From Phyllobates terribilis (lineage: Eukaryota): a stretch of 64,000 nt of DNA. The notes under the pieces were generated by a model. The model ran no database searches, had not been told where the DNA came from, and was given only the letters and a program-made list of their open reading frames with translations. The DNA lies in the NCBI RefSeq assembly GCF_046119375.1, contig NW_027362765.1, forward strand, positions 568,912,001 through 568,976,000, in the 5' to 3' direction. Shown here in pieces: positions 11,898 through 64,000 of this stretch; positions within the stretch are counted from its first letter, which is position 1, and each line of letters begins with the position of its first letter. Made by a program: the position numbers and the translations under genes.

Positions 11898-12004
11898 TGG
11901 TGTAGCTTGCTTAACAGCCGGGATAATCCGCTGACTAGCAGACACTGCTACTAGGCACAAAGTATTTCCTGGGCTAGATGCAGTTAAAAATTTGTAATTA
12001 GATA

Positions 12005-19409: not shown

Positions 19410-21255
19410 TTAGATGCAGAAAAAAATTATATTCAATTTGCAACCTGATGGAGGTCAGTATAGATGGACTAATACAACAAGTCCCACACACAGCTAGAAG
19501 CCCAATATTTTTTCAGAGGTAGATGCAGAAAAAAATATATTCAGTTTGCAACCTGATGGAGGTCAGTATAGATGGACTAATACAACAAGTCCCACACACA
19601 GCTAGAAGCCCAAATATTTTTTCAGAGGTACTGTAGATGCAGATAAAAATTATTTTTAATTTGCAACCTGATGGAGGTCAGTATAGATGGACTAATAGAG
19701 AAAGTCCGACACACTGCTAGAAGGCCAAATATTTTTTCAGAGCTAGATGCAGAAAAAAATAAGAATCAGTTTGCAACCTGATGGAGGTCTGTATAGATGG
19801 ATTAATAGAACAAGACCCACACACAGCTAGAAGCCCAATATTTTTTCAGAGGTAGATGCAGAAAAAAATATATTCAGTTTGCAACCTGATGGAGGTCAGT
19901 ATAGATGGACTAATACAACAAGTCCCACACACAGCTAGAAGCCCAAATATTTTTTCAGAGGTACTGTAGATGCAGATAAAAATTATTTTGAATTTGCAAC
20001 CTGATGGAGGTCAGTATAGATGGACTAATAGAGAAAGTCCGACACACTGCTAGAAGGCCAAGTATTTTTTCAGAGGTACTGTAGATGCAGATAAAAATTA
20101 TTTTTAATTTGCAACCTGATGGAGGTCAGTATAGATGGACTAATAGAGAAAGTCCGACACACTACTAGAAGGCCAAATATTTTTTCAGAGCTAGATGCAG
20201 AAAAAAATTATATTCAGTTTGCAACCTGATGGAAGTCAGTATAGATGGACTAATACAACAAGTCCCACACACAGCTAGAAGCCCAATATTTTTTCAGAGG
20301 TAGATGCAGAAAAAAATATATTCAGTTTGCAACCTGATGGAGGTCAGTATAGATGGACTAATACAACAAGTCCCACACACAGCTAGAAGCCCAATATTTT
20401 TTCAGAGGTAGATGCAGAAAAAAATATATTCAGTTTGCAACCTGATGGAGGTCAGTATAGATGGACTAATACAACAAGTCCCACACACAGCTAGAAGCCC
20501 AAATATTTTTTCAGAGGTACTGTAGATGCAGATAAAAATTATTTTGAATTTGGAACCTGATGGAGGTCAGTATAGATGGAATAATAGAGAAAGTCCGACA
20601 CACTGCTAGAAGGCCAAATATTTTTTCAGAGGTACTGTAGATGCAGATAAAAATTATTTTTAATTTGCAACCTGATGGAGGTCAGTATAGATGGACTAAT
20701 AGAGAAAGTCTGACACACTACTAGAAGGCCAAATATTTTTTCAGAGCTAGATGCAGAAAAAAATTATATTCAGTTTGCAACCTGATGGAGGTCAGTATAG
20801 ATGGACTAATACAACAAGCCCCACACACAGCTAGAAGCCCAATATTTTTTCAGAGGTAGATGCAGAAAAAAATATATTCAGTTTGCAACCTGATGGAGGT
20901 CAGTATAGATGGACTAATACAACAAGTCCCACACACAGCTAGAAGCCCAATATTTTTTCAGAGGTAGATGCAGAAAAAAATATATTCAGTTTGCAACCTG
21001 ATGGAGGTCAGTATAGATGGACTAATACAACAAGTCCCACACACAGCTAGAAGCCCAAATATTTTTTCAGAGGTACTGTAGATGCAGATAAAAATTATTT
21101 TGAATTTGCAACCTGATGGAGGTCAGTATAGATGGACTAATAGAGAAAGTCCGACACACTGCTAGAAGGCCAAATATTTTTTCAGAGCTAGATGCAGAAA
21201 AAAATTAGATTCAGTTTGCAACCTGATGGAGGTCAGTATAGATGGACTAATAGAA
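19410..21255. repeat. ~110-bp tandem array (17 units, two variant types) upstream of the transposase ATG
   Basis: (G/T)(C/G)AACCTGATGGA(G/A)GTC occurs 17 times at 108-116 bp spacing. Variants ...ACAACAAGTCCCACACACAGC... and ...GAGAAAGTCCGACACACTGC... alternate irregularly. Confidence 0.93.
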
Positions 21256-33737: not shown

Positions 33738-36700
33738 CCCCTTCCCGAAGTGCGCCGTACATGTACTGCTCTGCGGGAGTTGCATTCCCTCAAAGAGCAG
33801 TACATGTACGGGGTAGTGATTGGGCGGGCTCACGCTGAGCGCCGCCACGATCACGATCACATGCGGGTGTCAGCTTTGAGTGAGAGCTCACACCCTGCAG
33901 CAGTGCTCACGACTGGTGCTAGCACCAATTGCGGGCGTTTAACCCCCCTGAAACCGCTGTCAGTAGTGAGAGAGACATTGCAGGGCATCGCAGAGGGAGT
34001 GGGCTCTCTCTGTGATCCCATTAACACAACGCGATGTGATCGCCTTGTGTTGATGGTCTCCATGCTGACCCCTGGTCCCAAGATGGCCACGGGGTCCTTC
34101 AGGAAGGTGGCCTGTCAGCGCCTGCTCAGAGACCAGCAGCTGAGATTCCTCCTTCCTGCCTGTCAGATGCTGCTCTGATGCTCTGTAGTGCAAATGCATT
34201 GCAGAGCATCAGATCAGAGATCTGAAAGTTTGATAATGATGTCCCACCATGGGACAATGTAAAAAAGTAATAAAACATTTAATAAAAATTATAAAAATAT
34301 TTTTTTTAAAAATCACAAAATAAAGAAAAAAAAATATTAATCCAATAAATATATTTTTCTGTGTAAAAAAAACAGAAAAACCCCCAAAAAACAATAAAAG
34401 TACACATATTTGGTATCACCGCGTCCGGAACGACCCGACCTATAAAACTGTTCCACTAGTTAAACCATTCAGTGAACACTGTAAAAAAAATAGTAAAAAA
34501 CTATGCAAAAAATGATGCTTTATCATCATACCGCCAAACAAAAAGTGGAATAAAACGCGATCAAAAAGACACCTGTAAATAAATATGGTACCACTGAAAA
34601 CGTCATCTTGTTCCGCAAAAAACAAGCCACCATACAGCTCCGTCAGCAGAAAAATAAAAAAGCCACAGCTCTCAGAATAAAGCAATGCCAAAATAATTAT
34701 TTTTTCTATAAAATAGTTTTTATTGTGTAAAAGCGCCAAAACATAAAAAAAAATATAAATGTGGTACCGCTGTAATCGCACCAACCCGAAGAATAAATCT
34801 GCCTTATCAATTTTACCACACGTGGAACGGCATAAAAAAATCCCCAAAAACAATTCCTGAATTGCTGGATTTTGCTCATTCTGCCTCCCAAGCAACGGAA
34901 TAAAAAGCGATCAAAAAATGTCATGTGCCCAAAAATGGTACCAATAAATACATCAACTCGTCCTGCAAAAAACAAGCCCTTACATAACTCTGTCAGCCAA
35001 AATATAGAAAAATTATAGCTCTCAAAATATGGCGATGCAAAAACTTGTTTTTACAATAAAAAGCATCTTTTAGTGTGTGACAGCAGCCAATCATAAAAAC
35101 CCGATATAAATCTGGTATCGCTGTAATCGCTCCGACCCAAAGAATAAAGTCATCTAATCACTTATACCGCACGAGGAAAGGCGTAAAAAATATACTCCCA
35201 AAGAGTGCAGTAAGGCTCGGCTCACATTTATGCGGCGCTCTGCGCTGAGCGCTTATACCAGGGTTTCCGTGTAAATATCTGAAATATGTGATTCAGATGG
35301 GACACCCGGTGGAAGATTCCCTGTAATCAGACAGATGGAGGCACTGTGAACGCCATCTAGCTTATGATCCCACGGTGTCCATCTATTTATTAGATGTGCA
35401 TAAAAGTGCCGTCGGCCACAGTTCTGTGCACTTCTGAAAAGAAGGACAATGCTGAACAGAGGCCAGACGGATTCCAGACTAACTCTGCTGCCTCATTATA
35501 GTGAATGGATCCCTTGGGGATTTCATCTAAATCACACTTGATGGAAACCCCGATATAAGTGCTCAGGGTAGAGCTCAGGAAAAACGTGATCCAAAATGTT
35601 ATGTAAAATGTTCCCAATAAAAGCTTCAACTCCATTCACAAAAAAAGCCCTCACTCAGGTCCGTCATCTGTTAACAATAATATAGGGGCTTCCACATTAC
35701 TGGTAGCACAAAGGCTCTGGAAAAACAAAATGGCACCTCGCCCTCCAAAAGAAATCCCCCAAATTCTGCGCTCCCAAATCCAACTGTCCCCCTCCATTCT
35801 GCGCTCCAGTGTGTGTCTAAACCACAGTTAATGTCAACATGTTTGGCATTCCTGTAGCAATGAGAGCCTGCCTAAATAATGGTTGTATGTCTCCAGAAGA
35901 TTAAGCTGGGCATAATGTACTGGTCACTATAACATACTGGTCACTACAGCGTACTGGTCAATGGCAGTTTGCAATCTTCACTTAGCAACATCCACTGCTG
36001 CCTGTTTCTGGAAAACATCCATGGAGTCAAACTCATCACTACACCTGTAGATAAAATCACAAAGGGGTATAATTTCTAAAATGGGGTCACTTGAGAGAGA
36101 TTCTGCTCTTCTAGCATGTAGGGTCTCTGTATATGGAGTCCACAAACTATTCTAGGAAAATCTGCACTCCAGGAGGCAAAAAGCGCTCCGTCCCTCCTGA
36201 GACTTGGCGTGTTACTAAGCAGTACTGTACAGCCACATATGGGGTATTTCTACATTCAACAGAAAATGTGGGACAAATTTTGGTGCCATTTTTACCCATT
36301 TCCCATTGTAAAAATGTAAAACCTGGAGCTAAAGCAAAATTTTGGGGGAAAAATGTAATCATTTTTTCTTCACTGCCCAATGGTATAAAATAATGTGACA
36401 CACCTGTGGTGTCAATATGATCACTGCACCCCTGGATGAATTCATTGAGAGGTGTAGTTTGTAAAATGAGGTCACTTATGGGGGGTTCAGCTGATCTGGC
36501 ACCTCAGGGGCTCTACCAATGTGACATGGCACCCTCAGACTAGTCCAACTAAATCTGAACTCCAATATGGTGCTTCTTCCCTTTTGAGCTTTGCGCTATG
36601 CATACTCAATAGAAATTGCACAACAAATTTTGGGGTCCATTTTCTCCTGTTACCCTTGTGAAAATGCAAAATTTTGTGCTAAAAAACATTCTTGCGGGAA

Positions 36701-39189
36701 AAATTAGCTTTTTTTTATTTTCACGGCTGAATGTTGTAAACTTCTGTAAAGCAATTGGGGGTTAAAAGTGCTTATCACAAATCTAGATAAGTTCCCTGAG
36801 GTGTCTAGCTTCCAAAATGGAGTCACTTGTGGGGGCTTTCCACTGTTTAGGCACATCAGGGGCTCTCCAAACGCAACATAGCATCCACTAATTAGATCAG
36901 CAAATTTACATTTAAAAAGTCAAATGGCACTCCTTCCTTTCTGAGCCATGCCATGCGCCCAAACAGTGTTTTTTCCCCACATATGGGGTATCGGCTTACT
37001 CAAGAGAAATTGTACAACAAATGGTATGGGGGAATTTTTCCTGTTACTCTTATGAAAATGCAAAATTGGGGGCTGAAATACATTTTTGTGGTAAAAATGT
37101 GAACATTTTATTTTTACGGCTCAATGTTATAAATTTCTGTGAAGCATCTGGGGGTTCAAGGTGCTCACCACCCATCTAGATAAGTTCCCTGAGGGGTCTA
37201 GTTTCCAAAATGGTATCACTTTTGGGAGGTTTCCACTGTTTAGGCACATCAGGGGCACTCCAAACGCAACATAGCGTCCACTAATTATTCCAGCAAATTT
37301 TACATTCAAAAGGTCAAATGGAACTCCTTCCCTTCCGAGTCCTGCCATGCGCACAAACAGTGGTTTTCCCCCACATATGGGGTATTGGCTTACTCAGGAG
37401 AAATTGCATAACAAATTTTATGAGGCAATTTCTCCTGTTACTCCTATGAAAATGCAAAATTGGGGGCTGAAAAACATTTTTGTGGGAAAAATGTGAACAT
37501 TTTATTTTTACAGTTCAATGTTATAAACTTCTGTGAAGCACCTGGGGGTTTAAGGTGCTCACCACCCATCTAGATAAGTTCCCTGAGGGGTCTAGTTTCC
37601 AAAATGGTGTCACTTGTAGGGGCTTTCCACTGTTTAGGCACATCAGGGGCTCTCCAAATGCGACATGGCGTCCGCTAATTATTCCAGCAAATTTTACATT
37701 CAAAAAGTCAAATGGCGCTCCTTTAGATCCAAGTAGTGTTGAGCGAGTATGTTCTATTAACCCTTTCACCAAGTATGCTCGAGCCGAGCTCCGAGTATTT
37801 ATAGCTGCTCGATGATAAGGTTAAATCGCTCCCGTGTGCATGATTTGCGACTGTTTGACAGTTTTATTACATGTGAGGAATGTCTATTTCTTACACATTC
37901 CTCCCAAGTAATAAAGCTGTCAAACAGTTGCAAATAATGCACAAGGGAGCGATTTAACCTTATCACTGAGCAGCTATAAATACTCGGAGCTCGGCCCGAG
38001 CATACTCGGACAGAACATACTCGCTCAACCCTAGTTCCAAGCCCTTCTGTGCACCCAAAGAGTAGTTTTCCTCCACATATTGGGTATTCACGTACTCAGG
38101 AGAAATTTCAGAACAAATTGTATTGTGCAATTTTTCCTGTTACTCTTGTGAAAATGCAAAATTTGGTGTTGAAATAAACATTTTTTTGGAAAAATTTGAT
38201 TTCTTTATTTTTACGGATTAACGTTATAAACTTCTGTGAAGCACTTGGGGGTTAAAAGTGCTTACCACTCATCTAGATAAGGTCCCAGACGGGTCTAGTT
38301 TCCAAAACAGTGTCACTTGTGGGGGGTTTCCACTGTTTAGGCACATTAGCGGCCCTCCAAACATGACATGGCGTCGGTTAATTATGGCAGCAAATTTTAC
38401 ATTGAAAAAGTCAAATGGCGTTCATTCCCTTCTGAGCCCTGCCATATGCCGAAACAGTGGTTTTCCCCCACACATTGGGTATTGTTGTGCTCAAGAGAAA
38501 CTGCACAACAAATTTTGGGTCCATTTTATCCTGTTACTCTTGTGAAAGTAAAAAAAAAATTGGGTCTAAAGTAACATTTTTGTAAAAAAAAGTTAAATGT
38601 TTATTTTTTCCTTCCACATTCCAAAAATTCCTGTGAAGCACCTGAAGGGTTAATAAACTACTTGAATGTGGTTTTGAGCACCTTAGGTGTTCAGTTTTTA
38701 GAATGATGTCACTTTTGTGTATTTTCTGTCACATAGACGCCTCAAAGTCACTTCAAATGTGATGTGGTCCCTAAAAAAAATGGTTTTGTAAATTTTGTTG
38801 AAAAAATGAGAAATCGATGGTCAACTTTTAACCCTTATAACTTCCTAGCAAAAAAAATGTTGGTTCCAAAATTGTGCTGATGTAAAGTAGACATGTGGCA
38901 AATTTTATTTATTAACTGTTTTGTGTGACATATCTCTCTGATTTAAGGGCATAAAGATTAAACTTTCAAAATTTTTGCCAAATTTCCGATTTTTTCACAA
39001 ATAAACTCAAGTGATATCGAAGAAATTTTTAACACTACCATGAAGCAAAATATGCAATGAAAAAACATTCTCAGAATCACTGGGATCCGTTGAAGCGTTC
39101 CAGAGAAATTACCTCATAAAGTGACAGTGGTCAGAATTCAAAAAATTGGCCTGGTCAGGAAGGTGAAAACAGGCTTGGGGGTGAAGGGG
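33738..39189 (+). mobile_element. 5.45-kb non-autonomous piggyBac-like element with internal ~395-bp tandem repeats
   Basis: TTAA|CCCCTT...AAGGGG|TTAA termini. ATCTAGATAAG(T/G)T recurs at ~36781, 37173, 37567 and 38271. No transposase ORF. Confidence 0.85.
37734..38033. mobile_element. 300-bp palindromic hAT MITE
   Basis: TAGTGTTGAGCGAGTA...TACTCGCTCAACCCTA termini. TSD GATCCAAG/GTTCCAAG (7/8). The two halves are long inverted repeats. Confidence 0.88.
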
Positions 39190-40714: not shown

Positions 40715-41102
40715 ATAAAAAGATATAGGACAAAAATACTAAATCTCTATGGAAAATAAATAATTGTTATATAGTTTGCAATAATTACCTAAACACAGTT
40801 ATTACTAAAGGCATAAGTGATTTATAGTTTACGGACAAAAGCCGTAATTTAGAAGATCATTAGTTATGTTTGGCAAAAGTACACCCACTTAGTCTATTTT
40901 TAAAGTGACATAAATAATACCCTCAATTCAATAAATTAATACATTTGGATAAAATCTTGCGTTAACAATCATCATATTGCAAAACAGTTATTAAAACCAG
41001 CAATTAGCTGTAAATAAAAACACTAACCTTTGTTATACGAGATCAGAAAGAATAGTTTTAGAGCTCTTACTTTATTGCCTTGACTTACTAACAAGTTTTA
41101 TC

Positions 41103-41163
41103 ATGTCAACCAAAGGTGGAAGTAACCAGTGCCCAAAGCCATCATGTGAAAAGTGCCCAGATC
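41103..41163 (+). CDS. Candidate host gene, coding exon 1 (MSTKGGSNQCPKPSCEKCPD, phase-1 end)
   Basis: ATG in TTATCATGT context, 20 open codons plus 1 nt, then donor C|GTAAGT. Confidence 0.7.
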
Positions 41164-42347
41164 GTAAGTATACAATTCTATTTCATTTTATTAAATATCA
41201 TTGCTTGCTTTGCTTGGAAAATTATTTTTTTTATTATTTTCTGTGCTTTATGGAAAATGTTAATTTTAATCTCATGGCATGAATTTATTGTCAGTCTCTT
41301 TCATATTTTTTGCCACAAATGGGATACTATGCAGTTTTCCCTATAGTACTCCTGGTATCAAGTTCTCTTTTAACTAAGCAATTAAAAAATTATCAAAGGG
41401 AATATGGACCACAAACGGCAGCATAACCCAATTTAGAATTTGGAAACATGTTTCATCTAGAAAAATTATGACAGGTTTCCATTGGCAATGCAATACTTCT
41501 TGTATTGCATTGTAAAAGCAGCTGAGATGTTACATACAACATGGGCATAGGTGCATCACTGTTTGAAAAGAAATACATAAATCTCCATGTTTAGGTAATC
41601 TTATAAAAGCCCTTTAACTGTAGGTTTTAGTTACACAAAATAGTGTCTCCACACTAAATACCCCTATAGAAACAGATTACATTAAGAGTCACCAGTTTGT
41701 TTCTATGTAATCTGAGAACACCCTAATGTAGGAGCAGAATATGATTCCCGCGATGTGTCCCTTACCAAAACAATGTGGCTTCCAAGCAAAAACTACCTGA
41801 AGAATGGTCAGATCCTGGAAAATACATCATGTGAATATATTTTTAGAATAATGAGGAGATTTACTAACAAAAGTACGGCTTAATTCTGTCTAAAACTGAG
41901 GCAGAATTGTGACGTACATGCCTTGTGTCACATTTATAGGTAAAATTTATCAACGATGTGTTCCAAATGTTTACATATTTTTTTTTGCTTCTAACGAGAT
42001 CTAAAAGTAAGCCAAATAATGCATTATGTACACATTCAAAAAATGCATCAAATATATTACCCTGCATTAGTCACTGATATATATTTGGTTTATTTTAAGA
42101 TTTGTCTGATTTTATGCAGTCTGACAATTACAAAAGATTTAAAAAGATGAGAAAATTTGCCATATTTTAGCAAACAATGTTCAAAATGTCCACCCAGAAG
42201 ATTACAGGAAAAATATATCTTTGTACCGTTGGAGTCAGTATTTAGAAAAATATTGAAAAATTAAGAGACCACGGTATCAACTACTGAGGACTCTCAGTTT
42301 TTTTTATATTTTTCCAGCCCAAACCTGTTGAGCATGTTTTATTTTAA

Positions 42348-42724
42348 GGGGGTTGTCCAGCCTTAGGCTACAAGTCTGCAGTCACTTTATGTGACTGCAG
42401 ACTTGTGAATCTTCACATTGTGGGCACAGCATGCTGTTAGGAAAATCCGATGCCGGCACCAGGCGCATGACCGCAAGTATGTGATTTGCATACATGCAGT
42501 CACATGCCGACTAGACATGTGCGGCCTTGATCAATGCAAGTGTATTGAGCGAGACCAGACAGGTCTAGTCAGAATGTGGCTGGAATTATGAAAATCTCAA
42601 ACTTGCGGTCTCATGACCGCCTGCTCCCAGCATGGTAGAATCCTAATAATGAGCAGTGAGGATTCACAAGTCTGTAGTTACATAGAGTGACTGCAGACTT
42701 GTAGCCTAAGGCCAGACAACCTCT
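42348..42724. mobile_element. T2/Kolobok-type MITE in intron 1
   Basis: TTAA flanks. Long TIR TTGTC..GCCTTAGGCTACAAGTCTGCAGTCAC / GTGACTGCAGACTTGTAGCCTAAGGC..GACAA. Confidence 0.85.
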
Positions 42725-44140
42725 TTAATTACAGATATATTGCTGCGGCAAAAGTGAAAACAGAAAGGACAGTCATATTGATTGTCACCTTTGAACTAGC
42801 ATCTCTAAATTGTAAGTTCGGAATTCATTTAAGCATATTATTTCTGAATAGCTCACTCAAAAGTTTCTAGTTGTATTTTTTTGCAAAAATAATCACCACA
42901 CTATAATATGAAAATAACAATATCTCTGATACATTAGATTTACACACATCAATTTTTAAAAAACTGCCACTGTAGCTTTTGATACATATTAATTTATTTG
43001 AGTCTAAACCAGGAGCAGGTTCTAGAGAAATGGGAAATATAACGGAAATATTTTGGGTGACATTAAAGGTGGAATAAATTCTCAAATAATTCTTCTTAGT
43101 ATGATTTATTTACATGACAATCTGGCATTTTAACAAGTGTGTTTTGACTTTTCATATCTACTGTTTATCAAAATCATCTTTGCATTATGGTTTGGCTTTT
43201 TTAAGCATTTGCTTCATACGTGTGATGGCAAACTATATTTTACAAGAATTTTATCCTTCTGGCTTGTGTGCCAAACTCGTATTTAAAACGATTTTCAGAT
43301 TAGTTAAAGAGTATATTAAATGGAGGACTCATTATGTATTTTTATTCAGTTCTGATGACCGAAAGGCATTTTGTTTTCCTGTTCTACCTTTACATAATGA
43401 CACATCATTAACACGTCATGTAGTTAAAATATTAGGTAAAATATTAATCACAAATGTGGTATTCATTTACATAATATTTCTGTACATTCTATAGTAATTC
43501 CTATTCTATTAATTCTTCCTAACTCTTGCAATTTAATTACTTATTTTTTCTGAGTGCTATATATACAAAATAGCTCTCTTGTGGAAGTTAGTAAAGTTCT
43601 AAAACTTCCTTGTGGAAGTTAGTAGTACTAGTTACTCTGTAAGCCAAAGTCCCAACCACTATACAACTGTAAGACACGACTATGGATAAACAAGTGGGGA
43701 AAATAAATCATAATTTAGACTATAGTCAAATAAAATGTGTTGTACACGTGCCAAATTCTTGGATCTAAAATTCTAGTATCATGCATGGTACAGCTAATGT
43801 AGTATGTGGCCAAGGTACTGGTTGTGTATTTGTGTGTCTGTGCGGAGGGATGGTAAGGAGTTACCAATATCATTATGTAAGCAAATGCTTTTTTATGTAG
43901 GGTTTCTCAGTTAACTTCTATTTAAGACTGTATTCACATGTGCCTTTTTTTAGGCTGCTTGTTGTGATGCATTTTATGAGCCATTGCAAGGAGTGAATCT
44001 AAAGAAAAGAAAAAAAGTATAATGGGAAGATTAATATATTTTCTTGCTTTGGCTTTGAAACCTGCATGTTTGATTTCTTCCTTAGTAAGACTATTGTAAA
44101 AAATGATGCAAGTAAGTATAAATTTTATTTTACCGTATAG

Positions 44141-44308
44141 CTTGTCAATACACTACACAGAAAGACTCCTGTGGAGGAAGTTCTGGATGTGGAGGAAGTT
44201 CTGGATGTGGAGGAAATTCTGGATGTGGGGGAAATAGCGGAAGTTGTGGAACTGGGGGAAATTGTGGAAGTGGTGGAAAGCAAACCCAATGCCAACATAC
44301 TACACATC
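44141..44308 (+). CDS. Candidate host gene, coding exon 2 (168 nt, phase 1-1; Gly/Ser/Cys repeats)
   Basis: Acceptor TTTTATTTTACCGTATAG| and donor C|GTAAGT. Encodes (P)CQYTTQKDSCGGSSGCGGSSGCGGNSGCGGNSGSCGTGGNCGSGGKQTQCQHTTH. Confidence 0.8.
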
Positions 44309-44538
44309 GTAAGTGAATTCCCTATACTCTGTATAATACGCAAATAAAATGAAGCTGTAGGTCTTGACTATTTGAGGACATCTGTTGAAGTTCACAGTCT
44401 TTCTGAAGCAGAGATTGCTAACCATAATTGTGGTTTTTGGCTACTGACATGCATACCCAGCCTTAAGTAAATCCAGTGCTAAGTATAATCAATAAAATGG
44501 AATCAAATTCTGGGTTATTAAGCATCCATGCAAATGTA

Positions 44539-46171
44539 CAGTACAGACCAAAAGTTTGGACACACCTTCTCATTTAAAGATTTTTTTGTATTTTCATGAC
44601 TTTGAAAATTGTACATTCACACTGAAGGCATCAAAACTATGAATTAACACATGTGGAATTATATACTTAACAAAAAACTGTGAAACAACTGAAAATATGT
44701 CTTATATTATAGGTTCTTCAAAGTAGCCACCTTTTGCTTTGATGACTGCTTTGCACACTCTTGGCATTCTCTTGATGAGCTTCAAGAGGTTGTCACCGGA
44801 AATGGTTTTCACTTCACAGGTGTGCCCTGTCAGGTTTAATAAGTGGGATTTCTTGCCTTATGAATGGCGTTGGGACAATCAGTTGTGTTGTGCAGAAGTC
44901 AGGTGGATACACAGATGAGAGTCCTACTGAATAGACTGTTAGAATTTGTATTATGGCAAGAAAAAAGCAGTTAAGTAAAGAAAAACGAGTGGCCATCATT
45001 ACTTTAAGAAATGAAGGTCAGTCAGTCTAAAAAATTGGGTAAACTTTGAATGTGTCCCCAAGTGCAGTTGTAAAAACCATCAAGCACTACAAAGAAACTG
45101 GCTCACATGAGGACCGCCCCAGAAAAGTAAGACCAAGAGTCACCTCTGCTTCTGAGGATAAGTTTATCCGAGTCACCAGCCTCAGAAATCGCAGGTTAAC
45201 AGCAGCTCAAATTAAAGACCAGGTCAATGCCACACAGAGTTCTAGCAGCAGACACATCTCTTCAACAACTGTTAAGAGGAGACTTTGTGCAGCCGGTCTT
45301 CATGATAAAATAGCTGCTAGAAAACCACTGCTAAGGACAGGCAACAAGCAGAATAGACTTATTTGGGCTAAAGAACACAAGGAATGGACATTAGACCAGT
45401 GGAAATCTGTGCTTTGGTCTGATGAGTCCAAATTTGAGATCTTTGGTTCCAAACACCGTGTCTTTGTGCGATGCACAAAAGGTGAACGGATGGACTCTAC
45501 GTGCCTGGTTCCCACCGTGAAGCATGGAGGAGGAGGTGTGATGGTGTGGGGGTGCTTTGCTGGTGACACTGTTGGGGATTTATTCAAAATTGAAGGCATA
45601 CTGAACCAGCATGGCTACCACAGCATCTTGCAGCTGCATGCTATTCCATCATCCGGTTTGCGTTTAGTTGGACCATCATTTATTTTTCAACAGGACAATG
45701 ACCCCAAACACACCTCCAGGCTGTGTAAGGGCTATTTGACCAAGAAGGAGAGTGATGGGGTGCTACGCCAGATGACCTGGCCTCCACAGTCACCAGACCT
45801 GAACCCAATCGACATGGTTTGGGGTGAGCTGGACCGCAGAGTGAAGGGAAAAGGGCCAACAAGTGCTAAGCATCTCTGGGAACTCCTTCAAGATTGTTGG
45901 AAGACCATTTCCGGTGACTACCTCTTGAAGCTCATGAAGAGAATGCCAAGAGTGTGCAAAGCAGTCATCAAAGCAAAAGGTGGCTACTTTGAAGAACCTA
46001 GAATATAAGACATATTTTCAGTTGTTTCACTCTTTTTTGTTAAGTATATAATTCCACATGTGTTAATTCATAGTTTTGATGCCTTCAGTGTGAATGTACA
46101 ATTTTCAAAGTCATGAAAATACAGAAAAATCTTTAAATGAGAAGGTGTGTCCAAACTTTTGGTCTGTACTG
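44539..46171 (+). mobile_element. Intruder-type (DD38E) Tc1 transposon, full length (1633 bp), in intron 2
   Basis: TA TSD at 44537-44538 and 46172-46173. TIRs of ~200 bp, CAGTACAGACCAAAAGTTTGGACACACC... at both ends. Confidence 0.95.
44953..46008 (+). pseudogene. DD38E transposase pseudogene
   Basis: MARKKQLSKEKRVAIITLRNEGQSV*KIG*TLNVS has two early stops. LWSDE...QDN-x38-[E->D]MVW spacing counted as 38. Confidence 0.9.
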
Positions 46172-46318
46172 TATATAAAACCAGCTCCAAATTAGAAAAT
46201 TAACAAATAATATTCTAATTTATTGATCATTAGATCATCGTAAAACATTTATGTTATTCTAATGCAAATTTTCCAAATTAAAGTACTGATATTCTTTGTT
46301 TTCTCTTTCAATTTTTAG

Positions 46319-46338
46319 ATCATTGCCATAAGAAATGA
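46319..46338 (+). CDS. Candidate host gene, terminal coding exon ((H)HCHKK-stop)
   Basis: Strong acceptor TTCTTTGTTTTCTCTTTCAATTTTTAG|. The phase-1 join gives HHCHKK then TGA. Confidence 0.65.
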
Positions 46339-46364
46339 GAGGAAAAAAAACAATGGGAGAGCTG

Positions 46365-46370
46365 AATAAA
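46365..46370 (+). terminator. Candidate polyadenylation signal AATAAA
   Basis: It lies 27 nt after the proposed stop. Another AATAAA is at ~46447. Confidence 0.45.
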
Positions 46371-47222
46371 GCTTTTAAGCAATTAATTTACTTAATTAAG
46401 ACTGCATACCTCCAATACTAACCATTATCATCAAGCCAAGCTATTAAATAAATCTAATGTGTTATTCATCCTATATAATGCTCAATTTATTTTATACTAC
46501 TTTTTAAGATGGAAGATGAAGTAATGAAATAGAGTCAAACCCACCATAACTGATGCTACAGGAAAATTAGGTGCTGAAAAAGAACCCCATAAAATGCATG
46601 TAAATCATGGATGATTCAGGTCTATTACAAGAGAAAACTTTATTGTACCTAATTGATTCTTACTTAAAACGAGGAACTTCCTTTTTTCATATTTTTCGTC
46701 TAACATGGTGTATAAATAATACCCTTTACTACTCAGATAGGTGATTTTTCATGTGGCAGATTTGTTTCAGACTTTTCTCCATGTGTCTCCTACATTTGAT
46801 TGGGACTTTTCAAATTTAATATGCTTACTGCAAATACAACCCCATTCAAATGTGTGGACTGATATTTCTGCAATTATTTTGCCATTTGTAAAATTACTCT
46901 TAAACGGTCACTGATGTCTACAAAGACTGCATAAATCAATTGCACGTGCAAGTGAAAGAAACTTTACATCAAATCTTATCAGACAAATATGCTTATTGTT
47001 CTAGCTATCAGCCACTTTGAATTCCCAGCTACACTGCCCAATATCCTGCATACTGTCCTCCATGCTTCTACTTCTAAACATGTACTACATAGAAACAGAA
47101 GAGCAAAAATCTCTTGTCACTATGCAATGTATGAGAGACACTGTAGCAACTAAAGTCTACCTCCTAGCTCAGAGACAACTGAAAAATAAAGGTAGAGCCA
47201 GTAAACGACTAGTATGCTTTAA

Positions 47223-50200
47223 CCCCTTCACAATATTTGACGTACATTTACATCAATGTTCATGACCCTGCCTTTGATGTCGGCTTGCACGCCGAGCCCA
47301 CATCTTTCCCAGCACATCATAGCTGTTAACCTGTTAAATCTCACAGTTAATCTGACAGTGGGATTTAACACGCGACAGCTGGAAACGCTTTATTCATCCT
47401 GCAAATCGATGCGCTCGTCATTTGATCATGGGGCGCCAGTGGGTTGTCATGACAGCTGGGGGTCAACTGATGAACCCAATGCCTGTCATTAGGATCGTCC
47501 TGTGCATGCCGGTAAATGTCTGGCGCTCATAGAAGATTGTGATTTCTGCTATATATATAGCAGTATTGATGCACTTCTATGTATAGTAAAAGCGATCAGA
47601 CGATCGCAGCATCAAGTCCCCTATGAGGACTATTCAATACAGTAAAAAGTGAGGAAAAAAGTTGTTAGCAATATGAAAAAAATAAAATCCCCACAAAAGT
47701 TCAAATCACCTTCATTTCGCCACATTAGAAATTAAACAATTAAAAAAATACATATATTTGGTATTGCTGTGTTCGTAAAAGTCTGATCTATCAAAATATA
47801 AAATAAATTAATGTGAACAGTAAACACTGTAATGAGAAAAAAAATCTAAATATCATATTTATGTTTTTTTTGGTCACCACAACATTGCAATAAAATGCAA
47901 TTAGAGGCGATCAAAACATTGTATATACCCAAAATTGGCATAAATGACAATATCAGCTCAGGGTGCAAAAAAAAGCCCCCACACAGCCCCATGCCCTGAA
48001 AAATGTAAACATTATGGGTCTTGGAAAATGGAGACATAAGCCAAATTTTTTTTTCGTACACATTTCCAAATTTTTTTTAACTACTAAAATAAAAAAAAAA
48101 GAACTTAATATGTTTTGTCCCACTCATAGTCATACTGACCAGAAGAATCATATTGCCAGGACAGTTTTACCATTTTGTGAACATGCTAAATAAAAAAAAT
48201 ATATATTGTTGAATTTTTTTGCAATTTCAATGTACTTGGAATTTTTTCCCACTTTCCAATGTATTACATGATAAAATGAATGGTGTCATTTAACCACTTC
48301 GCGCCAGAGCCTGTTTTTGCCTTCGTGACCAGGCCAATTTTTTCAATTCTGACCACTGTCACTTTATGAAGTAATTACTCTGGAATGCTTTAAGGGATTC
48401 CCCTGATTCTGAGAATGTTTTTTCGTGACATATTGTACTTCATGATAGTGGTAAAATTTCTTCGATATCACTTGTGTTTATTTGTGAAAAAATCGGAAAT
48501 TTGGCAAAATTTTTGAAAATGTTGCAATTTTCAAACTTTGAATTGTCATGCCCTTAAATCAGAGAGATATGTCACACAAAATAGTTAATAAATAACATTT
48601 CCCACATGTCTACTTTACATCAGCACAATTTTGGAACCCAAATTTTTTTTGTTAGGAAGCTATAAGGGTTAAAAGTTGACCAGCGATTTCTCATTTTTCC
48701 AGCAAAATTTACAAAAACATTTTTATAGGGACCACATCTTATTTGAAATGACTTTGAGGGGCCTTTATGACAGAAAATACCCAAAAGTGTCACCATTTAA
48801 AAAACTGCACCCCTCAAGGTGCTGAAAACCACATTCAAGAAGTTTATTAACCTTTCAGTTGTTTCACGGGAATTTTTGAAATGTGGAAGAAAACAATGAA
48901 CATTTAACTTTTTTTCACAAAAATGTTACTTTAGACCCAATTTTTTTATTTTTACAAGGATAATAGGAAAAAATGGAATACACAATTTGTAGTGCAATTT
49001 CTCATTAGCGCACTGATACCCCATATGTGAGGGAAAAACACTGTTTAGGCTCACTGCAGGGTTCGGAAGGGAAGGAGCGCCATTAGACTTTTTGATTGTA
49101 AAATGTGTTTGAATAATTAGCAGACGCCATGTTGCGCTTGGAGAGCTCCTGATGTGCCTAAACAGTTGAAACCCCCAGCAAGTGACACCATTTTGGAAAA
49201 TAAACCCCTTAGGGAACTTATCTAGATGTGTGGTGAGCACCTTGAACCCCAAGGTGCTTCACAGAAGTTTATAATATTGAGCTGTAAAAATAAAATGTTC
49301 ACATTTTTCACACAAAAAATGTTTTTCATCCCCTAATTTTGCATTATCATAAGGGTAACAGGAGAAATTGCACCATGAAATTTGATGTGCAATTTCTCCT
49401 GAGTATGCCGATACCCCATATGTGGGGGAAAATTACTATTTGGATACACTGTAGGGTTCGGAAAGGAAGGAGCGCCATTTGACTTTTTGAATGTAAAATT
49501 TGTTTGAATAATTAGCGGACGCCATGTCGCATGTGGGGGGACCCTAATGTGCCTAAACAGTGGAAACCAGCCACAAGTGACACCATTTTGGAAACTAGAC
49601 CCCTTAGGGAACTTATCTAGATGTGTGGTGAGCACCTTGCACCCGCAGGTGCTTCACAGAAGTTTATAATTTTGAGCCGTAAAAATAAAATTTTCACATT
49701 TTCCCACAAAAAATGTTTTTCATCCCCTAATTTTGCATTATCATAAGGATAACAGGAGAAATTGCACCATGAAATTTGTTTTGCAATTTCTTCTGAGTAC
49801 GCCGATACCCCATATGTGGGGGAAAACCACTGCTTTGGTGTACGGCAGGGTTCGGAAGAGAAAGGAGCGCTATGTTGGCTGGGCTAGGTTGCGTACACCT
49901 TATCACATTTGAAGAGTCGCTGACATGCCGAAACAGCAGAAACTCCCACAAGTGACCCCATTTTGTAAACTACACCTCTCAAGGAATTCATCTAGGGAAG
50001 TAGTGAGTATTTTTTAATTTTTAAATTTATACCATTGGGCAGTGAAGAAAACATAATTGTATTTTTACCATAAAAAAATGTTTTACCCTCAGATTTTACA
50101 TTTTCACACAGGGCTATAGGTAAAAATGGTGCTGAAATGTGTCACACAATTTCTTCTAAAAGTGGCAATACCCCATATGTGGCTGTATCGTACCGCTTAG

Positions 50201-55065: not shown

Positions 55066-57590
55066 CCATTTTACCCACCAAACCTGTTTTCACCTTCATG
55101 ATCAAGCTATATTTTACAATTCTGACCAGTGTCAATTTATGTAGAAACCACTCTGGAACTCTTCAACAGATCCCACTGATTCTGAGAATGTTTTCTCATG
55201 ACATATTGTGCTTCATGATAGCGGGAAAATTAGTTTGATATGACTTACTGTTGACTGCAGCAGGTGGCTCCTGTCTCCTGTGCCCCACTCCTCCACCGCT
55301 GATGCTCCCCCCATCCACAGCCACAGCAACACCATTCGGACTATAAGACACTCCCCACTTTCCTCCAAAATTTTGGAGGAAAAAAGTACGTCTTATAGTC
55401 CGAAAAATACAGCAACTTTTTTCACAAAAATTAGACCCAAATTTTTCTATTTTCACAAGGGTAACAGGAGAAAATGGACACCAAAATTTTTTGCGCAATT
55501 TCTCCTCGGCACTCTTTTTATGCACGGCATGGCTCGGAAGGGAAGGAGCACCATTTGACTTTTTGAATGCAAATTTGCTGGATAATTAGCGGGCGCCATG
55601 TCATGTTTGGCAAGCCCATGATGTGCCTAAACAGTAAAAATCCCCCACAAAACCCCACACAAGTGACCCCATTTTGGAAACTAGACCCCTCAGGGAACTT
55701 ATCTAGATGTGTGGTGAGCACCTTGAACCCCCAGGTACTTCACAGAAGTTTATAACATTGAGGAGTGAATAGAAAGAAAATTAGATTTTTCCCACAAAAA
55801 ATTTTTTTTAGCCTTAAATTTTGCATTTTCACAAGGGTAACAGGAGAAATTGCACCATTCAATGTGTTGTGCAATTTCTCCAGATTATACCGATACCCAA
55901 TATGTGAATGAAAGCTATTGTTTGGGCACAAGGCAGGACTCGGAAGGGAAGGAGAGCCATTTCACTTTTTGGATGCAAAATTTATCATTAGCGGATGCCA
56001 TGTCATGTTTGGAGAGCCCTTGATGTGCCTAAACAGTGAAAAACCCCACAAGTGAACCAATTTTGAAAATTATACCCCTTTGGGAATTTATATACATGTG
56101 TAATAACAATTTTAATTTTATGGGTGTTTTCCAGAAACAAGCAGCTCATGCTTCTAGAGACATGCACCCGTAAATTAGGCGGGCTCTCATTGCCGCAGAA
56201 ATGCAAACATGTGGACACTAAATGTGGTTTAGGCGCACTGGGGTCAGAAGGGAGGAGTTAGCTTGGATTTAGGAGTGCAGAATTTGCTGACTTTCTTTTG
56301 AGTGGCGAGGAGCCATTGCAATTTTCCAGAGCTTTTGTGCTACCAGTAATGTAGTAGCTCCCTATATTTCCATTAACAGATGACCATTTTCATTAACAGA
56401 TGACCGACCTGAGTGGAGACTCGCTTTTTTGTATATTGAGTTGAAGCTTTTATTGAGAACATTTTACATAAAGTTTGGGATCGCATTTATCCTGCGCTCT
56501 ATGCTGATCATTTACTTTAGGGTTTCCGTCTAAATTTCCAAGAGATGTGATTCATGTGAAACCCCTGAGGGATAACTTAACCATAATGAGGCAGCAGAGT
56601 TACTCTGGACCCTGTCTGGCCTTTGTTCAGTGCTGTTGCTTTTTTCAGAGGTGCACAAAACTGTGGCAGACCGTGCTTTTATGCTCGCCTAAAAAACAGA
56701 CACTGCCAAACCATAGGCCAGACAGCGTCCAAAGTGACTCCATCTGCTTCATTATAGGGAATCTTCTGTCGGGAGTTCTGTCTGAATCATGTATTCCAGA
56801 AATTTACATGGAAACCTTGGTGTAAGCTCTAAGCACAGAGAACAGGATAAATGTGCCTTACTGCGATCTTTAGGGAGCAGAATGAAAAAAAATCAACGGC
56901 AGATAAAGAATTGGATTTTTTCACTTTTTACGCCGTTTCTCATGCAGTATAAGGGATTAGACGACTTTATTCTTTGAGTCGGTGCGATTACAGTGATGCC
57001 ATATTTATATCAGGTATTTTTATTTGGCTGCTGTGACATACTAAAAGATGCTTTTTATTCAAGAAACAAGTTTTTGCATCCCCACATTTTGAGAGCTATA
57101 ATATTTTCATATTTCGGCAAACAGAGTTGTATGAGGGCTTGTTTTTTACGGGACAAGTTGACATTTTTATTGGTATCATTTTTGGGCACATGACAGTTTT
57201 TAATCACTATTTCAATTTTTGGGAGGCCGAATGAACAAAAAACAGCAAATTCTGGATTTTTTTTATACTGTTCAGCGTGTGATAAAATTGATAAGGCAGC
57301 TTTATTCTTTGGATCAGTACAATTACTGAGATACCAGAGATATTTTTTATGTTTTAACGCTTTTTCCCAATAAAAATTATTTTATAGAAAAAAAGTAATT
57401 ATTTTTGCATCCCTTTATTTTGAGAGCTATAACTTTTATTTTTCTGCTGATGGAGCTGTATGGCAGCTGTTTTATTGCGGGACAAAATGACGGTTTCAGT
57501 GATAGCATTTTTATTCACATTCGCCATTTTGATCACATTTTAATCCACTTTGTTTGGTGGTATGATGATAAATTCACACAGAAAAAATAA
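55066..57590 (-). mobile_element. Third, truncated copy of the piggyBac-like family
   Basis: TTAA|CCATTTTACCCACCAAACCTGTTTTCACCTTC parallels 48294 onwards, with the same ~395-bp repeats and internal modules. Confidence 0.75.
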
Positions 57591-61398: not shown

Positions 61399-62736
61399 TG
61401 TGGTGCCCCTGAGGGTTCAACCGCCACAGGAATGCTGCACTTCTCTAATGGAGTATGGTGTTCCTCCTCCGAGGTAAGGCCAGTGTGATAGCCGTGACCC
61501 AGCCTTGCATCCAACACCACACTTCTCCACCAGAGGGAGCTAGTAGGCACTAGGTGCTGCTCCCCTGGTTACAGGGAGACTGGGAAACACAAAGTGGTAG
61601 GAACCAGTTAGTGGGTGAGGGTGGAGGACTTACTAGTTAGTTACACTTCAAATTTCATATTTAATAGTATGCCATCTTTGATTTTGGTCCTTCCATCCTA
61701 AGTCGACAGTTCTAGTGGTTGTACTGTGCTGTCAAACTACTGTGTGTTAATGTGACTTCCCTCCGGGAGCACAGATCCTGTGTGGGCCTGCACCAGCAAG
61801 GGACACAGCCCTCGTACCCTGGCCTTGGGACGAGAGGTAGGTTGTAGACAAGGAATGTCTCAATCCGGCCAAGGACCAGGATCAAGAAGGCCCAGGAGCT
61901 CTAGAGTGTGGCTCCCCAGCAAATAGGTCCCGGGGAGGATGCAGACGGAGCGGAGCACGCCACCTGTCCTCGCCTTCCTGATCTTTTCAGAGGGATTCCG
62001 GCTGCAAGAGGGGTACCGGCCCCCTACACCCGACCTTGTGCTCCATGTCCTGAATGGGAAAGCCCGGTTAGGCCCTGAGGATCCCACCGGGCATCGGATG
62101 GAGAGGAATTGCCACCCGTGCCCTAGTCCTGAGAGGAGCTCAGAGGGAGACCCGGCCTATCCACACACGCACAGACGGGAAAGGGTGAAGTCTGTAGTGC
62201 AGGAACACTCTGGTGTAGGGTCGCTACCGAACACTGGACTTTCTCGGAGGTAGTCGGACCCCCGTCCTTGGTGGCTGCAGGACTCCACGGGGAGCAGGGA
62301 GTGACCTTCCCGCTATCATCTCTAAGTGAGTAAAGCCTTGGAAGTTCACCCCTATGGCCTCTAGACTGTTCATTATGCGCCATACCATGCGATGCGGTGC
62401 ATGTACTCCCTGCACTACTACCCCCCTCCATCCTGTTTGCCTGCCCTGAGGCCACGCTCCGCCTGTGGGGAGCAGTAATAATTTTGGCCGCCATGACACC
62501 AGGCCTCAGCGGACTGTAGCGGCGCTGGTGACCCTTCACCAGGCACCACAGGTGGCGTAGTCATTAAAATAAGCACTCAACCTGGACAAGCCCACACCAT
62601 CTCTTTCTAATGTGACGGCCCTGAGACGGGTCGGGCCCGGGCCACGGCTGCATCCCACCTCTCCATCACAGGGCCCGACACCGAGTCCCCCAACACCCAG
62701 GGTAAAACACGGGCTTCTCTGAGTAGAAGTGTCACA
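61399..62736 (+). mobile_element. 5' LTR (~1338 bp) of a Gypsy-type retrotransposon that runs off the window
   Basis: TGTGGTGCCCCTGAGGG start (compare TGTAGCACCCTGAGGG at 12162) and ...GTGTCACA end, followed 3 nt later by a PBS. Confidence 0.8.
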
Positions 62737-62739
62737 ACC

Positions 62740-62758
62740 TGGTGTAGTCGACAGGATC
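62740..62758 (+). other. Primer-binding site complementary to the tRNA-Ser(AGA/TGA) 3' end
   Basis: TGGTGTAGTCGACAGGATC versus the expected TGGCGTAGTCGGCAGGATT (16/19), taken from the recalled vertebrate tRNA-Ser end ...AATCCTGCCGACTACGCCA. Confidence 0.75.
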
Positions 62759-63009
62759 GCGTGCCCGCAGCAAAGGAAGAAGTGCCCATTGCTACCGGGT
62801 ACTGTGTGCCTTACACCTTGAACTGTTGTTTTACACTTAAAATGGCGCCCGCCCAAGAAGAACAGACGCCATAAAGCTGTAAAAAGACTGTCTTTAAACG
62901 CCTCCCATCGTGGGCTGGGCTCCCTTTTGGCGCCAAAAATGTGGACTGCCCCTTCCATCAGAGACTGTCCGCAGGGTAAAGCCCGTCAAACTGGATGGGC
63001 TGAACGAAG

Positions 63010-64000
63010 GTGGGCCTGTCAGCATTCCGCCCAGGAACCGCCCCAAAAGAGGAGGAAAATGAAAAGCAACAAGGTGCGGCCATTGCATTCGGAGCTTGGC
63101 AGTCAATGGAGGCAGACATGGATGCCTCTGGGGAGCAAGTCCACGCATCTACTGAACCCGGTTCAGGCCCTTCACCCGGCAGAGAGCAAGGCGGCAGCGT
63201 GTTGACCCCGGGAGAGATTGCATTTCTCCAGCAGGAAGCTCCGGAGCTCCTAAGAAGGCAGAGAGAGGCCCAGGAGGCTGCGACGGCTGCGTGGCGGGAG
63301 GAGATGCTGCTGCGTATCCGGGACCGCCGCCAAGAAGTTGAGGGCCCAGGACAAATCGACTCGGTGACAGAGGTCGAGGGCGGCCCAGCGGCGGGTGAGT
63401 GTGCAACCCCTGCCCTGGCTGCAGAGCCTACCGTGACTATCCTGGACCTCATGACGGAGTACCTGATTCCCCACGCGGTCACCTGGGAGCAAGCGTTGGC
63501 TCCAGAGCTGCAATCGGCAGCTGTAGGTGGGGACCTGCGATGCCGCACAAACCCTGACACGGAGGTGCCTGAAGCTGCGGAGGAAACTACCGGCTCCAAC
63601 CTGGACTGGTCCGCGCCTACAGAGGACTCGCAGCAACCCGTTCTTACCACACTACCCGCACCAGCGGTAACCTGGCCCGAGGCTGAGGAGTGGGCCTGGG
63701 AAAACCAGGGGGGGCGAACTAATGGGCTTCCCCCGGGAGACCCGGGCTGAAGCGCGGAGGAGGAGCCAGTGGTGCAGCCACCAGATATTCCAGCTCACAT
63801 GAGAGCAACGTCGGCGGGAGCAGCGCTGCGAGCGCCTCGAGGCCCGGACCATACCTGCAAAAACTCGGGTGCGTCAGGAGGAGGCCACCCATCCCAGTCC
63901 CCGGTACAAAGGCCAAGTCATCCGTTTTCATCATGAGGCGGGGTGGGGGTTCATCCGGTGTCCCCAGTTCCAGGACGATGTGTTCGTCAGCCGGCGGGAC
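63010..64000 (+). pseudogene. First ORF of the LTR element, disrupted (frameshift near 63710, TGA at 63800), ending in a cold-shock-domain-like sequence
   Basis: A 246-aa acidic ORF continues in the +1 frame as MGFPRETR...*EQRRREQRCERLEAR...PRYKGQVIRFHHEAGWGFIRCPQFQDDVFVSRRD up to the window end. Confidence 0.65.

What the first reader, a model, noticed from the sequence alone, without database searches (positions are those of the whole stretch)
41103..46370. Hidden three-exon gene for an 82-aa Gly/Ser/Cys-rich, cornified-envelope-like protein
Seen: three exons join through GT-AG introns, both in phase 1 with the same ATC|GTAAGT donor. The product is MSTKGGSNQCPKPSCEKCPDPCQYTTQKDSCGGSSGCGGSSGCGGNSGCGGNSGSCGTGGNCGSGGKQTQCQHTTHHHCHKK*, with 20 Gly, 12 Ser and 12 Cys, Gln/Lys-rich ends, no signal peptide, and AATAAA 27 nt after the stop. 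Within the repeat, GGA->GGG and TCT->AGC are synonymous in this frame, which suggests selection on it. The ORF track misses the gene. Known: MS..Q-C-P-K heads, CGGSSG cores and K-rich tails characterise loricrin, LCE and SPRR transglutaminase substrates. Those amniote simple-EDC genes have a single coding exon and are generally considered amniote-specific. Inference: this may be an amphibian skin structural protein that arose convergently or is an unrecognised EDC relative, with a modular symmetric-exon design.
Basis: partly seen in the sequence, partly recalled or inferred. Interest (0 to 1): 0.82.

Follow-up and report, generated by a model that had tools for sequence, protein, structure and literature searches.

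The report
Frog skin cornification gene (AEDC-type)

Summary
The exons are 41103-41163, 44141-44308 and 46319-46338. Both donors read ATC|GTAAGT and both introns are phase 1. The product is 82 aa (20 Gly, 12 Ser, 12 Cys), and AATAAA lies at 46365-46370.

The exons have 47% G+C against 31-35% in the introns and flanks. ATCGTAAGT occurs only twice in the window, at exactly these two donors. Four of the five base differences between the 18-nt repeat units are synonymous in the proposed frame. No simulated gene model reached the real cysteine content.

The architecture matches the AEDC family of Sachslehner et al. (Mol Biol Evol, Aug 2026, PMC13487633). That family has three exons spliced in phase 1 like ADIRF, products mostly under 100 aa that are Cys/Gln/Lys/Pro-rich or Gly-rich, internal repeats, and expression in skin, claws, nuptial pads and tadpole mouthparts.

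It does not fit single-coding-exon EDC genes such as loricrin, LCE and SPRR.

Three things remain untested: synteny (sncg to glud1), sequence homology to named AEDC proteins, and expression. No database search found a relative. Exon 3 is the least secure part.

Transposon matches point to an anuran genome; the species is undetermined.

The parts
41011..41020 (+). TATA-like element (TAAATAAAAA) about 85-90 nt upstream of the ATG; putative core promoter
   Evidence: Read from the sequence. Inferred only; the transcription start was not determined.
41103..41163 (+). Coding part of exon 1 (61 nt, 20 codons plus 1 base): a hydrophilic Cys/Pro/Lys-rich head with no signal peptide. The ATG has A at -3. 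The donor is ATC|GTAAGT, phase 1.
   Evidence: G+C is 47.5% against 33% in intron 1.
41164..44140 (+). Intron 1 (2977 nt, phase 1, GT-AG)
   Evidence: G+C is 33%.
44141..44308 (+). Exon 2 (168 nt, symmetric phase 1-1). It encodes the Gly/Ser/Cys repeat core flanked by Gln/Thr/Cys/His-rich unique sequence. The donor is ATC|GTAAGT.
   Evidence: The open frame (44122-44313) is tightly bracketed by the acceptor and the donor. It is the only strongly Cys/Gly-rich open frame in the window.
44170..44279 (+). Internal tandem repeat within exon 2. Four 18-nt units (44170-44241) encode CGGSSG/CGGNSG, followed by degenerate units.
   Evidence: TRF found period 18, 3.6 copies, 95% matches.
44309..46318 (+). 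Intron 2 (2010 nt, phase 1, GT-AG)
   Evidence: Without the transposon it would be about 370 nt.
44534..46176 (+). Tc1/mariner-type transposon wholly inside intron 2. It has 277-nt inverted arms (97% complementary) and a 320-aa transposase ORF at 45046-46008 that lacks an ATG. It is a passenger, not part of the gene's function.
   Evidence: Inverted repeats. Pfam HTH_Tnp_Tc3_2 and DDE_3.
46319..46338 (+). Coding part of exon 3 (20 nt): it completes a His codon, then His-Cys-His-Lys-Lys and TGA (46336-46338). This is the least certain exon.
   Evidence: Of the five candidate acceptors (46234-47729), 46319 has by far the best polypyrimidine tract, 0.86 against 0.55-0.68.
46365..46370 (+). AATAAA polyadenylation signal, 26 nt after the stop
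   Evidence: Read from the sequence.

Best explanation

Shown: it has three coding exons joined by two phase-1 GT-AG introns. The product is an 82-aa, signal-peptide-free, low-complexity protein.

Inferred from the family description: the gene is transcribed in keratinocytes that are undergoing cornification (epidermis, or hard structures such as tadpole mouthparts, nuptial pads, tubercles or claws).

Inferred from composition: the disordered protein is built into the cornified material. Its 12 cysteines, one every six residues in the CGGSSG repeats, would form disulfide cross-links with keratins and other matrix proteins. The Gln- and Lys-rich ends could serve as transglutaminase substrates. 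The Gly/Ser loops would give flexibility. The His-rich tail may add metal- or pH-dependent contacts.

Shown for the repeat, inferred as an evolutionary route: the repeat core grew by intragenic 18-nt duplication. The symmetric phase-1 exon 2 is the module that the family is known to amplify.
For: - The gene anatomy is exact.
- Exon G+C is 47% against 31-35% in introns and flanks.
- Both donors share CA[CG]ATC|GTAAGT, and ATCGTAAGT occurs nowhere else in 128 kb of both strands.
- The exon-2 open frame is bracketed within 19 nt and 5 nt by the acceptor and donor.
- Cysteine enrichment extends into the non-repeat parts of all three exons. No simulated model reached the overall cysteine fraction.
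- Four of the five repeat-unit differences are silent in this frame only.
- The transposon sits cleanly inside intron 2.
- The published family definition matches point by point. It has three exons all in phase 1 as in ADIRF, most proteins under 100 aa, Cys/Gln/Lys/Pro-rich and Gly-rich subgroups, intragenic repeats of 6-37 residues, and no S100 domain. It is expressed in skin and skin appendages, and members were detected in stratum corneum and claws (PMC13487633).
- The preprint 10.64898/2026.09.30.755311 reports Gly-enriched (16-44%) and Cys-enriched (>15%) AEDCs that are upregulated in cornifying tadpole mouthparts. This protein has 24% Gly and 14.6% Cys.
- The host is an anuran: the hAT transposase ORF in the window has its best matches in Ranitomeya and Phyllobates.
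Against: - No sequence relative was found:
  - exon 2 against 5.8 billion proteins
  - exon 2 by full HMMER against 1.84 billion representatives
  - the exon-1 ORF
  - Pfam
  - a metagenome scan
  - a literature motif search
- No second AEDC-like gene and no sncg or glud1 motif was found in the 64 kb, so cluster membership and synteny are unshown.
- No RNA evidence could be obtained.
- The gene structure alone arises by chance in 5-24% of simulated windows.
- The repeat is open in two frames.
- Exon 3 is only 20 coding bases and has rival acceptors.
Confidence: 0.7

Rival explanations
1. There is no gene. An 18-nt minisatellite happens to be open in this frame, and chance splice-like sites, an ATG and an AATAAA complete a plausible but unreal model.
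For: The repeat is open in two frames and nearly in the third. Phase-compatible three-exon models appear in 24% of simulated windows with GTRAGT donors and in 5% with GTAAGT donors. Exon 3 is very short and has four rival acceptors. No homologue and no transcript-derived protein was found in any database.
Against: Cysteine and Gln/Lys/His enrichment continues outside the repeat in all three exons, and 0 of 801 simulated pairs matched the Cys content. The repeat differences are silent only in this frame. The exon/intron G+C contrast is 47% against 31-35%, and the ATCGTAAGT 9-mer occurs only at the two donors. The architecture coincides exactly with a published gene family.
Confidence: 0.1
2. 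It is a real AEDC-derived locus but not the functional gene as modelled. It could be a silenced or decaying copy, or a gene with a different last exon (for example acceptor 46234) or further exons.
For: The AEDC paper reports pseudogenised members with premature stops. A 1.6-kb transposon has inserted in intron 2. Alternative acceptors would give different C-termini. A degenerate copy of the donor context (ATCATCGTAAAAC) lies at 46234-46246.
Against: The frame is intact from ATG to stop, and both donors are consensus. The 46319 acceptor has the best pyrimidine tract (0.86). It yields a Cys/His/Lys tail in keeping with the rest of the protein, followed closely by AATAAA.
Confidence: 0.1
3. It is a real skin structural gene that does not belong to the AEDC. 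It would be either a diverged relative of the EDC (loricrin/LCE/SPRR-type SEDC genes) or an independently arisen orphan elsewhere in the genome.
For: Synteny with sncg and glud1 is unshown, and no paralogue lies within 64 kb.
Against: SEDC genes have one coding exon, whereas this gene has three with phase-1 introns. Loricrin and SPRPs have no orthologue in frogs (PMC13487633). Only caecilians among amphibians are known to have SEDC genes. The phase-1 three-exon plan is the ADIRF/AEDC plan. In large anuran genomes packed with transposons, as this window is, a 64-kb stretch can easily hold a single cluster member.
Confidence: 0.1

Closest known systems
AEDC (amphibian epidermal differentiation cluster) genes, aedc1-aedc25; Sachslehner et al., Mol Biol Evol 2026 (PMC13487633)
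   Same: Three exons with both introns in phase 1. A short (<100 aa) low-complexity product without an S100 domain or signal peptide. Enrichment in Cys, Gln and Lys plus Gly. Intragenic repeats. An amphibian host.
   Different: Position between sncg and glud1 is not shown, and no neighbouring paralogue lies in this window. No sequence match to a named Aedc protein could be made, because their sequences are in a supplement that is not held. This protein mixes the two published classes (24% Gly with 14.6% Cys) and ends in a His-rich tail. Histidine is not mentioned anywhere in the paper's main text.
ADIRF (adipogenesis regulatory factor), the proposed ancestor of the AEDC
   Same: Three-exon, all-phase-1 gene structure and a small disordered product, according to PMC13487633. 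From my recollection only, ADIRF also starts Met-Ala-Ser-Lys-Gly, close to the Met-Ser-Thr-Lys-Gly here. This was not tested.
   Different: ADIRF is broadly expressed and, as far as I recall, neither Cys-rich nor Gly-rich and without a tandem repeat core. No alignment was run.
[quoted passage not shown]
   Same: Works alike (inferred): Gly/Ser/Cys loops with Gln/Lys-rich ends suited to disulfide and transglutaminase cross-linking in cornified cells.
   Different: SEDC genes keep the whole coding sequence in one exon after a non-coding exon 1, and they lie among S100/SFTP genes. None is known in frogs. The structure feature was tested here and is not met.
Mammalian keratin-associated proteins (high-sulfur and high-Gly KRTAPs, e.g. 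KRTAP5)
   Same: Small, Cys- and Gly/Ser-rich repeat proteins that act as a matrix between keratin filaments. GenBank's pipeline labelled a toad AEDC gene 'KRTAP5-5' for this reason.
   Different: KRTAPs are a mammalian family (origin in mammals; no KRTAPs exist in amphibians) and, as I recall, intronless. The resemblance is compositional.

Membership tests
AEDC | Three exons, all spliced in phase 1 (the ADIRF-type structure) | tested here: met
   61 + 168 + 20 coding nt. Both introns fall after the first base of a codon and both are GT-AG. The family feature is stated in PMC13487633.
AEDC | Short low-complexity protein, mostly <100 aa, rich in Cys/Gln/Lys/Pro or in Gly, with no S100 domain | tested here: met
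   82 aa. Gly is 24%, Cys 14.6%, and Cys+Gln+Lys 30.5%. There is no Pfam domain.
AEDC | Amino-acid repeats produced by duplication inside exons | tested here: met
   An 18-nt unit in 3.6 copies at 95% identity lies inside exon 2, with degenerate copies after it.
AEDC | Lies in a tandem cluster of paralogues between sncg and glud1 | tested here: inconclusive
   No paralogue was found by tblastn/blastn or by composition scans. No synuclein or glutamate-dehydrogenase motif was found in the six frames. The window is only 64 kb and is full of transposons, and the rest of the genome is not available.
AEDC | Host is an amphibian | tested here: met
   The 1233-aa hAT ORF has its best matches (75-83% identity over parts of it) in Ranitomeya imitator and Phyllobates terribilis. 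This is indirect, and the species was not identified.
AEDC | Detectable sequence similarity to other AEDC or ADIRF proteins | tested here: inconclusive
   No hits. The named Aedc sequences are in a supplement that is not held. The authors state that the Gly-rich members cannot be reliably aligned even with each other.
AEDC | Expression restricted to skin epithelium or cornifying appendages | not testable with these tools
   No RNA data were available. No transcript-derived copy of the protein exists in the protein collections.
SEDC (loricrin/LCE/SPRR type EDC genes) | Entire coding sequence in a single exon | tested here: not met
   The coding sequence is split over three exons.
SEDC (loricrin/LCE/SPRR type EDC genes) | Location in the EDC among S100 and S100-fused-type genes | not tested
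   Only 13 open frames were scanned against Pfam, and none showed an S100 or EF-hand domain. Short S100 exons were not searched for systematically.

The most novel reading that the evidence does not exclude
The gene lies outside the sncg-glud1 cluster and is unrelated to ADIRF. It would then be a further, independent origin of a loricrin/KRTAP-like cornification protein in frogs, one that converged on the phase-1 three-exon plan as well as on composition.
Probability: 0.08. Interest if true: 0.6.

Novelty: new member of a known kind. Interest (0 to 1): 0.3.

Why it matters
If confirmed, this adds a member to a gene family that is only months old, probably from a frog lineage outside the eight species surveyed. 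Its composition bridges the Gly-rich and Cys-rich subgroups, and it has a His-rich tail. The authors of the family paper explicitly call for wider taxon sampling.

It also shows that these genes escape ORF-based and homology-based annotation. Every database search here came back empty. AEDC repertoires in amphibian genomes are therefore probably under-counted and need splice-aware, composition-aware searches. It does not open a new question.

Tried and rejected
Searches that found nothing:
- Exon 2 (55 aa) against 5.8 billion clustered proteins gave no hit at E<=0.01.
- Exon 2 by exhaustive HMMER against 1.84 billion representatives gave 0 hits.
- The exon-1 read-through ORF, scored on residues 1-40, had no candidate sharing words.
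- Pfam on the exon pieces gave nothing meaningful.
- Exact look-ups of ten window ORFs, including the VEEVLD-frame ORF and the exon-1 ORF, were all absent from the collection.
- The exact look-up of the hAT ORF was absent.
- A metagenome scan matched 600 pattern stretches, but none was a relative.
- A full-text search for four peptide motifs returned 0 papers.
- The supplement of PMC13487633, which lists the Aedc sequences and coordinates, is not held.
Full report
**The observation**

- The ATG is at 41103 and the coding part of exon 1 runs to 41163.
- Exon 2 is 44141-44308.
- Exon 3 begins at 46319.
- Both donors read ATC|GTAAGT and both introns are GT-AG and phase 1.
- The product is the stated 82-aa peptide, with 20 Gly, 12 Ser and 12 Cys.
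- The only correction is that the stop codon is 46336-46338, so the CDS is 249 nt.
- AATAAA follows at 46365-46370.
- The head is hydrophilic and has no signal peptide.
- The ATG has A at -3. A TATA-like TAAATAAAAA lies about 85-90 nt upstream. That it is a promoter is inference.
- The mechanical ORF list does miss the gene. Exon 1 sits in a 59-aa read-through ORF, and the exon-2 frame has no start codon.

**Is it more than chance?**

The structure alone is not compelling.
- I enumerated ATG exon / symmetric phase-1 exon / terminal exon models in Markov-simulated windows.
- At least one model appeared in 24% of windows with GTRAGT donors, and in 5% with GTAAGT at both donors.
- The repeat is open in two frames.

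Several independent features point the other way.
- None of 801 simulated exon1-exon2 pairs in 1000 windows reached the real cysteine fraction of 0.145. The Cys enrichment is not confined to the repeat: about 7 of the 47 non-repeat residues are Cys. The simulations lack tandem repeats, so this contrast is somewhat generous.
- Exons 1 and 2 have 47% G+C, against 31-35% in the introns and the 2-kb flanks.
- ATCGTAAGT, and the 12-mer CA[CG]ATCGTAAGT, occur only twice on either strand of the window, at exactly the two donors.
- The four 18-nt units differ at five bases. In the proposed frame four of these are silent (GGA>GGG, and the three-base Ser-to-Ser change TCT>AGC) and one is Ser>Asn. The other frames take several replacements or a stop.
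- The exon-2 open frame is bracketed within a few codons by its acceptor and donor.
- Exon 2 is the only strongly Cys/Gly-rich open frame in 64 kb. It has no other copy in the window, so it is not part of a dispersed repeat.

**The weakest part**

Exon 3 has only 20 coding bases. Five acceptors downstream of exon 2 would close the frame and are followed by an AATAAA.
- The 46319 acceptor has by far the best polypyrimidine tract, 0.86 against 0.55-0.68 for the others.
- It gives a His/Cys/Lys tail in keeping with the rest of the protein.

Intron 2 carries a Tc1/mariner element.
- It lies wholly within the intron, 226 nt after exon 2 and 143 nt before exon 3.
- Before the insertion the intron was about 370 nt.

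**What it is**

[quoted passage not shown] According to that paper:
- Most AEDC genes have the structure of ADIRF, with three exons all spliced in phase 1.
- The proteins range from 57 to 751 aa, but most are under 100 aa.
- They fall into a Cys/Gln/Lys/Pro-rich group and a Gly-rich group.
- Repeats of 6-37 residues arose by duplication within exons and by amplification of exon 2.
- The genes lie between sncg and glud1.
- They are expressed in skin, clawed toes, nuptial pads and the tadpole mouth.
- Aedc proteins were detected in stratum corneum and clawed toes.
- GenBank's pipeline had labelled members 'loricrin', 'SPRR2B' and 'KRTAP5-5' because of compositional resemblance. The authors interpret this resemblance as possible convergence.

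A preprint (10.64898/2026.09.30.755311) adds further detail.
- In Bombina, Cys-enriched (>15%) and Gly-enriched (16-44%) AEDCs are upregulated during formation of the cornified mouthparts.
- aedc15 is expressed in cells just beneath the terminal darkened corneocytes.

The gene here matches each structural and compositional criterion. It has three phase-1-joined exons, 82 aa, 24% Gly, 14.6% Cys, 30.5% Cys+Gln+Lys and an intragenic repeat.

**Host**

The window is dense with transposons.
- There is an intact 1233-aa hAT/zf-BED transposase ORF. Its best protein matches are in the dendrobatid frogs Ranitomeya imitator and Phyllobates terribilis, at 75-83% identity over parts of it. This supports an anuran origin.
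- The species was not identified. None of ten window ORFs, nor the hAT ORF, is in the protein collection.

**What could not be shown**
- Sequence homology. Exon 2 found nothing in 5.8 billion proteins or in an exhaustive HMMER pass over 1.84 billion representatives. The exon-1 ORF shared no words with anything. Pfam, a metagenome scan and a literature motif search were empty. The named Aedc sequences are in a supplement that is not held. The authors say that the Gly-rich members cannot be aligned reliably.
- Synteny. There is no second AEDC-like gene and no synuclein or glutamate-dehydrogenase motif in the window. In a transposon-rich genome a 64-kb window may hold only one cluster member, so this result is uninformative and is not evidence against membership.
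- Expression. There are no RNA data.

**How it most likely works**

Shown: a small, signal-less, low-complexity protein with Cys at six-residue spacing in a Gly/Ser core, Gln/Lys-rich ends and a His-rich tail.

Inferred by analogy with the family and with loricrin and KRTAPs:
- It is expressed in differentiating keratinocytes.
- It remains disordered.
- It is locked into the cornified matrix by disulfide bonds, and possibly by transglutaminase isopeptide bonds through its terminal Gln and Lys residues.

The symmetric exon 2 and the internal 18-nt repeat are the modules by which such genes lengthen.

**Rivals**

I give about 0.1 to each of three rivals:
- A chance model on a minisatellite.
- An AEDC-derived but silent or differently terminated copy.
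- A real gene outside the AEDC. Within this rival, the EDC-relative version is the least likely, because the single-coding-exon criterion fails and frogs lack SEDC genes.

**Verdict**

However, the kind of gene has been published since August 2026, so this is a probable new member of a known family. Its interest is modest. It is also a useful reminder that such genes are invisible to ORF-based and homology-based annotation.

Noticed in passing
window 401-1533 and 4382-5384 (larger duplicated segment 191-2200 vs 4066-6039): Two arrays of a 36-nt tandem repeat (about 31 and 28 copies, 88-90% matches) are open in several frames on both strands; one frame gives 12-aa units of the type TADAVDKAEQSE. 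Each array is followed by 130-nt repeats. The whole 2-kb segment is duplicated at 89.5% identity. There is only a weak Pfam DUF6366 match. Whether it is a satellite or a repetitive exon is unresolved.
   Followed up: partly
window 15593-19294 (-): An uninterrupted 1233-aa hAT-family transposase ORF with zf-BED and the hAT dimerisation domain, possibly from a recently active element. Its best matches are partial, in dendrobatid frog proteins. Fragments of related hAT and Tc1 elements are visible elsewhere, for example near 10.4, 14.2-14.9, 28.3 and 58.3-58.9 kb (by eye).
   Followed up: partly
window 36256-38482 (+) and 49015-50129, 55522-56115 (-): Copies of one repeat family of about 395 nt lie upstream of the gene in one orientation and downstream in the opposite orientation, so the gene sits between inverted blocks of the same repeat.
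   Followed up: partly
window 11566-11930 (+): Rfam match to eukaryotic small-subunit rRNA (77 bits, E 9.5e-19). The 365-nt match is spread over model positions 4-1116, so it is a fragmentary rRNA-derived piece and not a gene.
   Followed up: no
window 19411-21252: A satellite with a 115-nt unit and a 448-nt higher-order period (about 16 copies, 90-93% matches).
   Followed up: no
window 62000-64000: A G+C-rich end of the window (60% G+C, CpG observed/expected 0.62) with long open frames on both strands and no Pfam match for the two frames tested. My exon scan flagged a symmetric phase-1 open exon candidate at 63035-63394. It could be a CpG island or first exon of a neighbouring gene, or a G+C-rich repeat.
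   Followed up: no
window 46234-46246: Right after a weak acceptor, ATCATCGTAAAAC resembles the shared donor context CA[CG]ATCGTAAGT of exons 1 and 2. Both candidate acceptors (46234 and 46319) are followed by ATCAT. This may be a decayed remnant of an exon or donor duplication.
   Followed up: no
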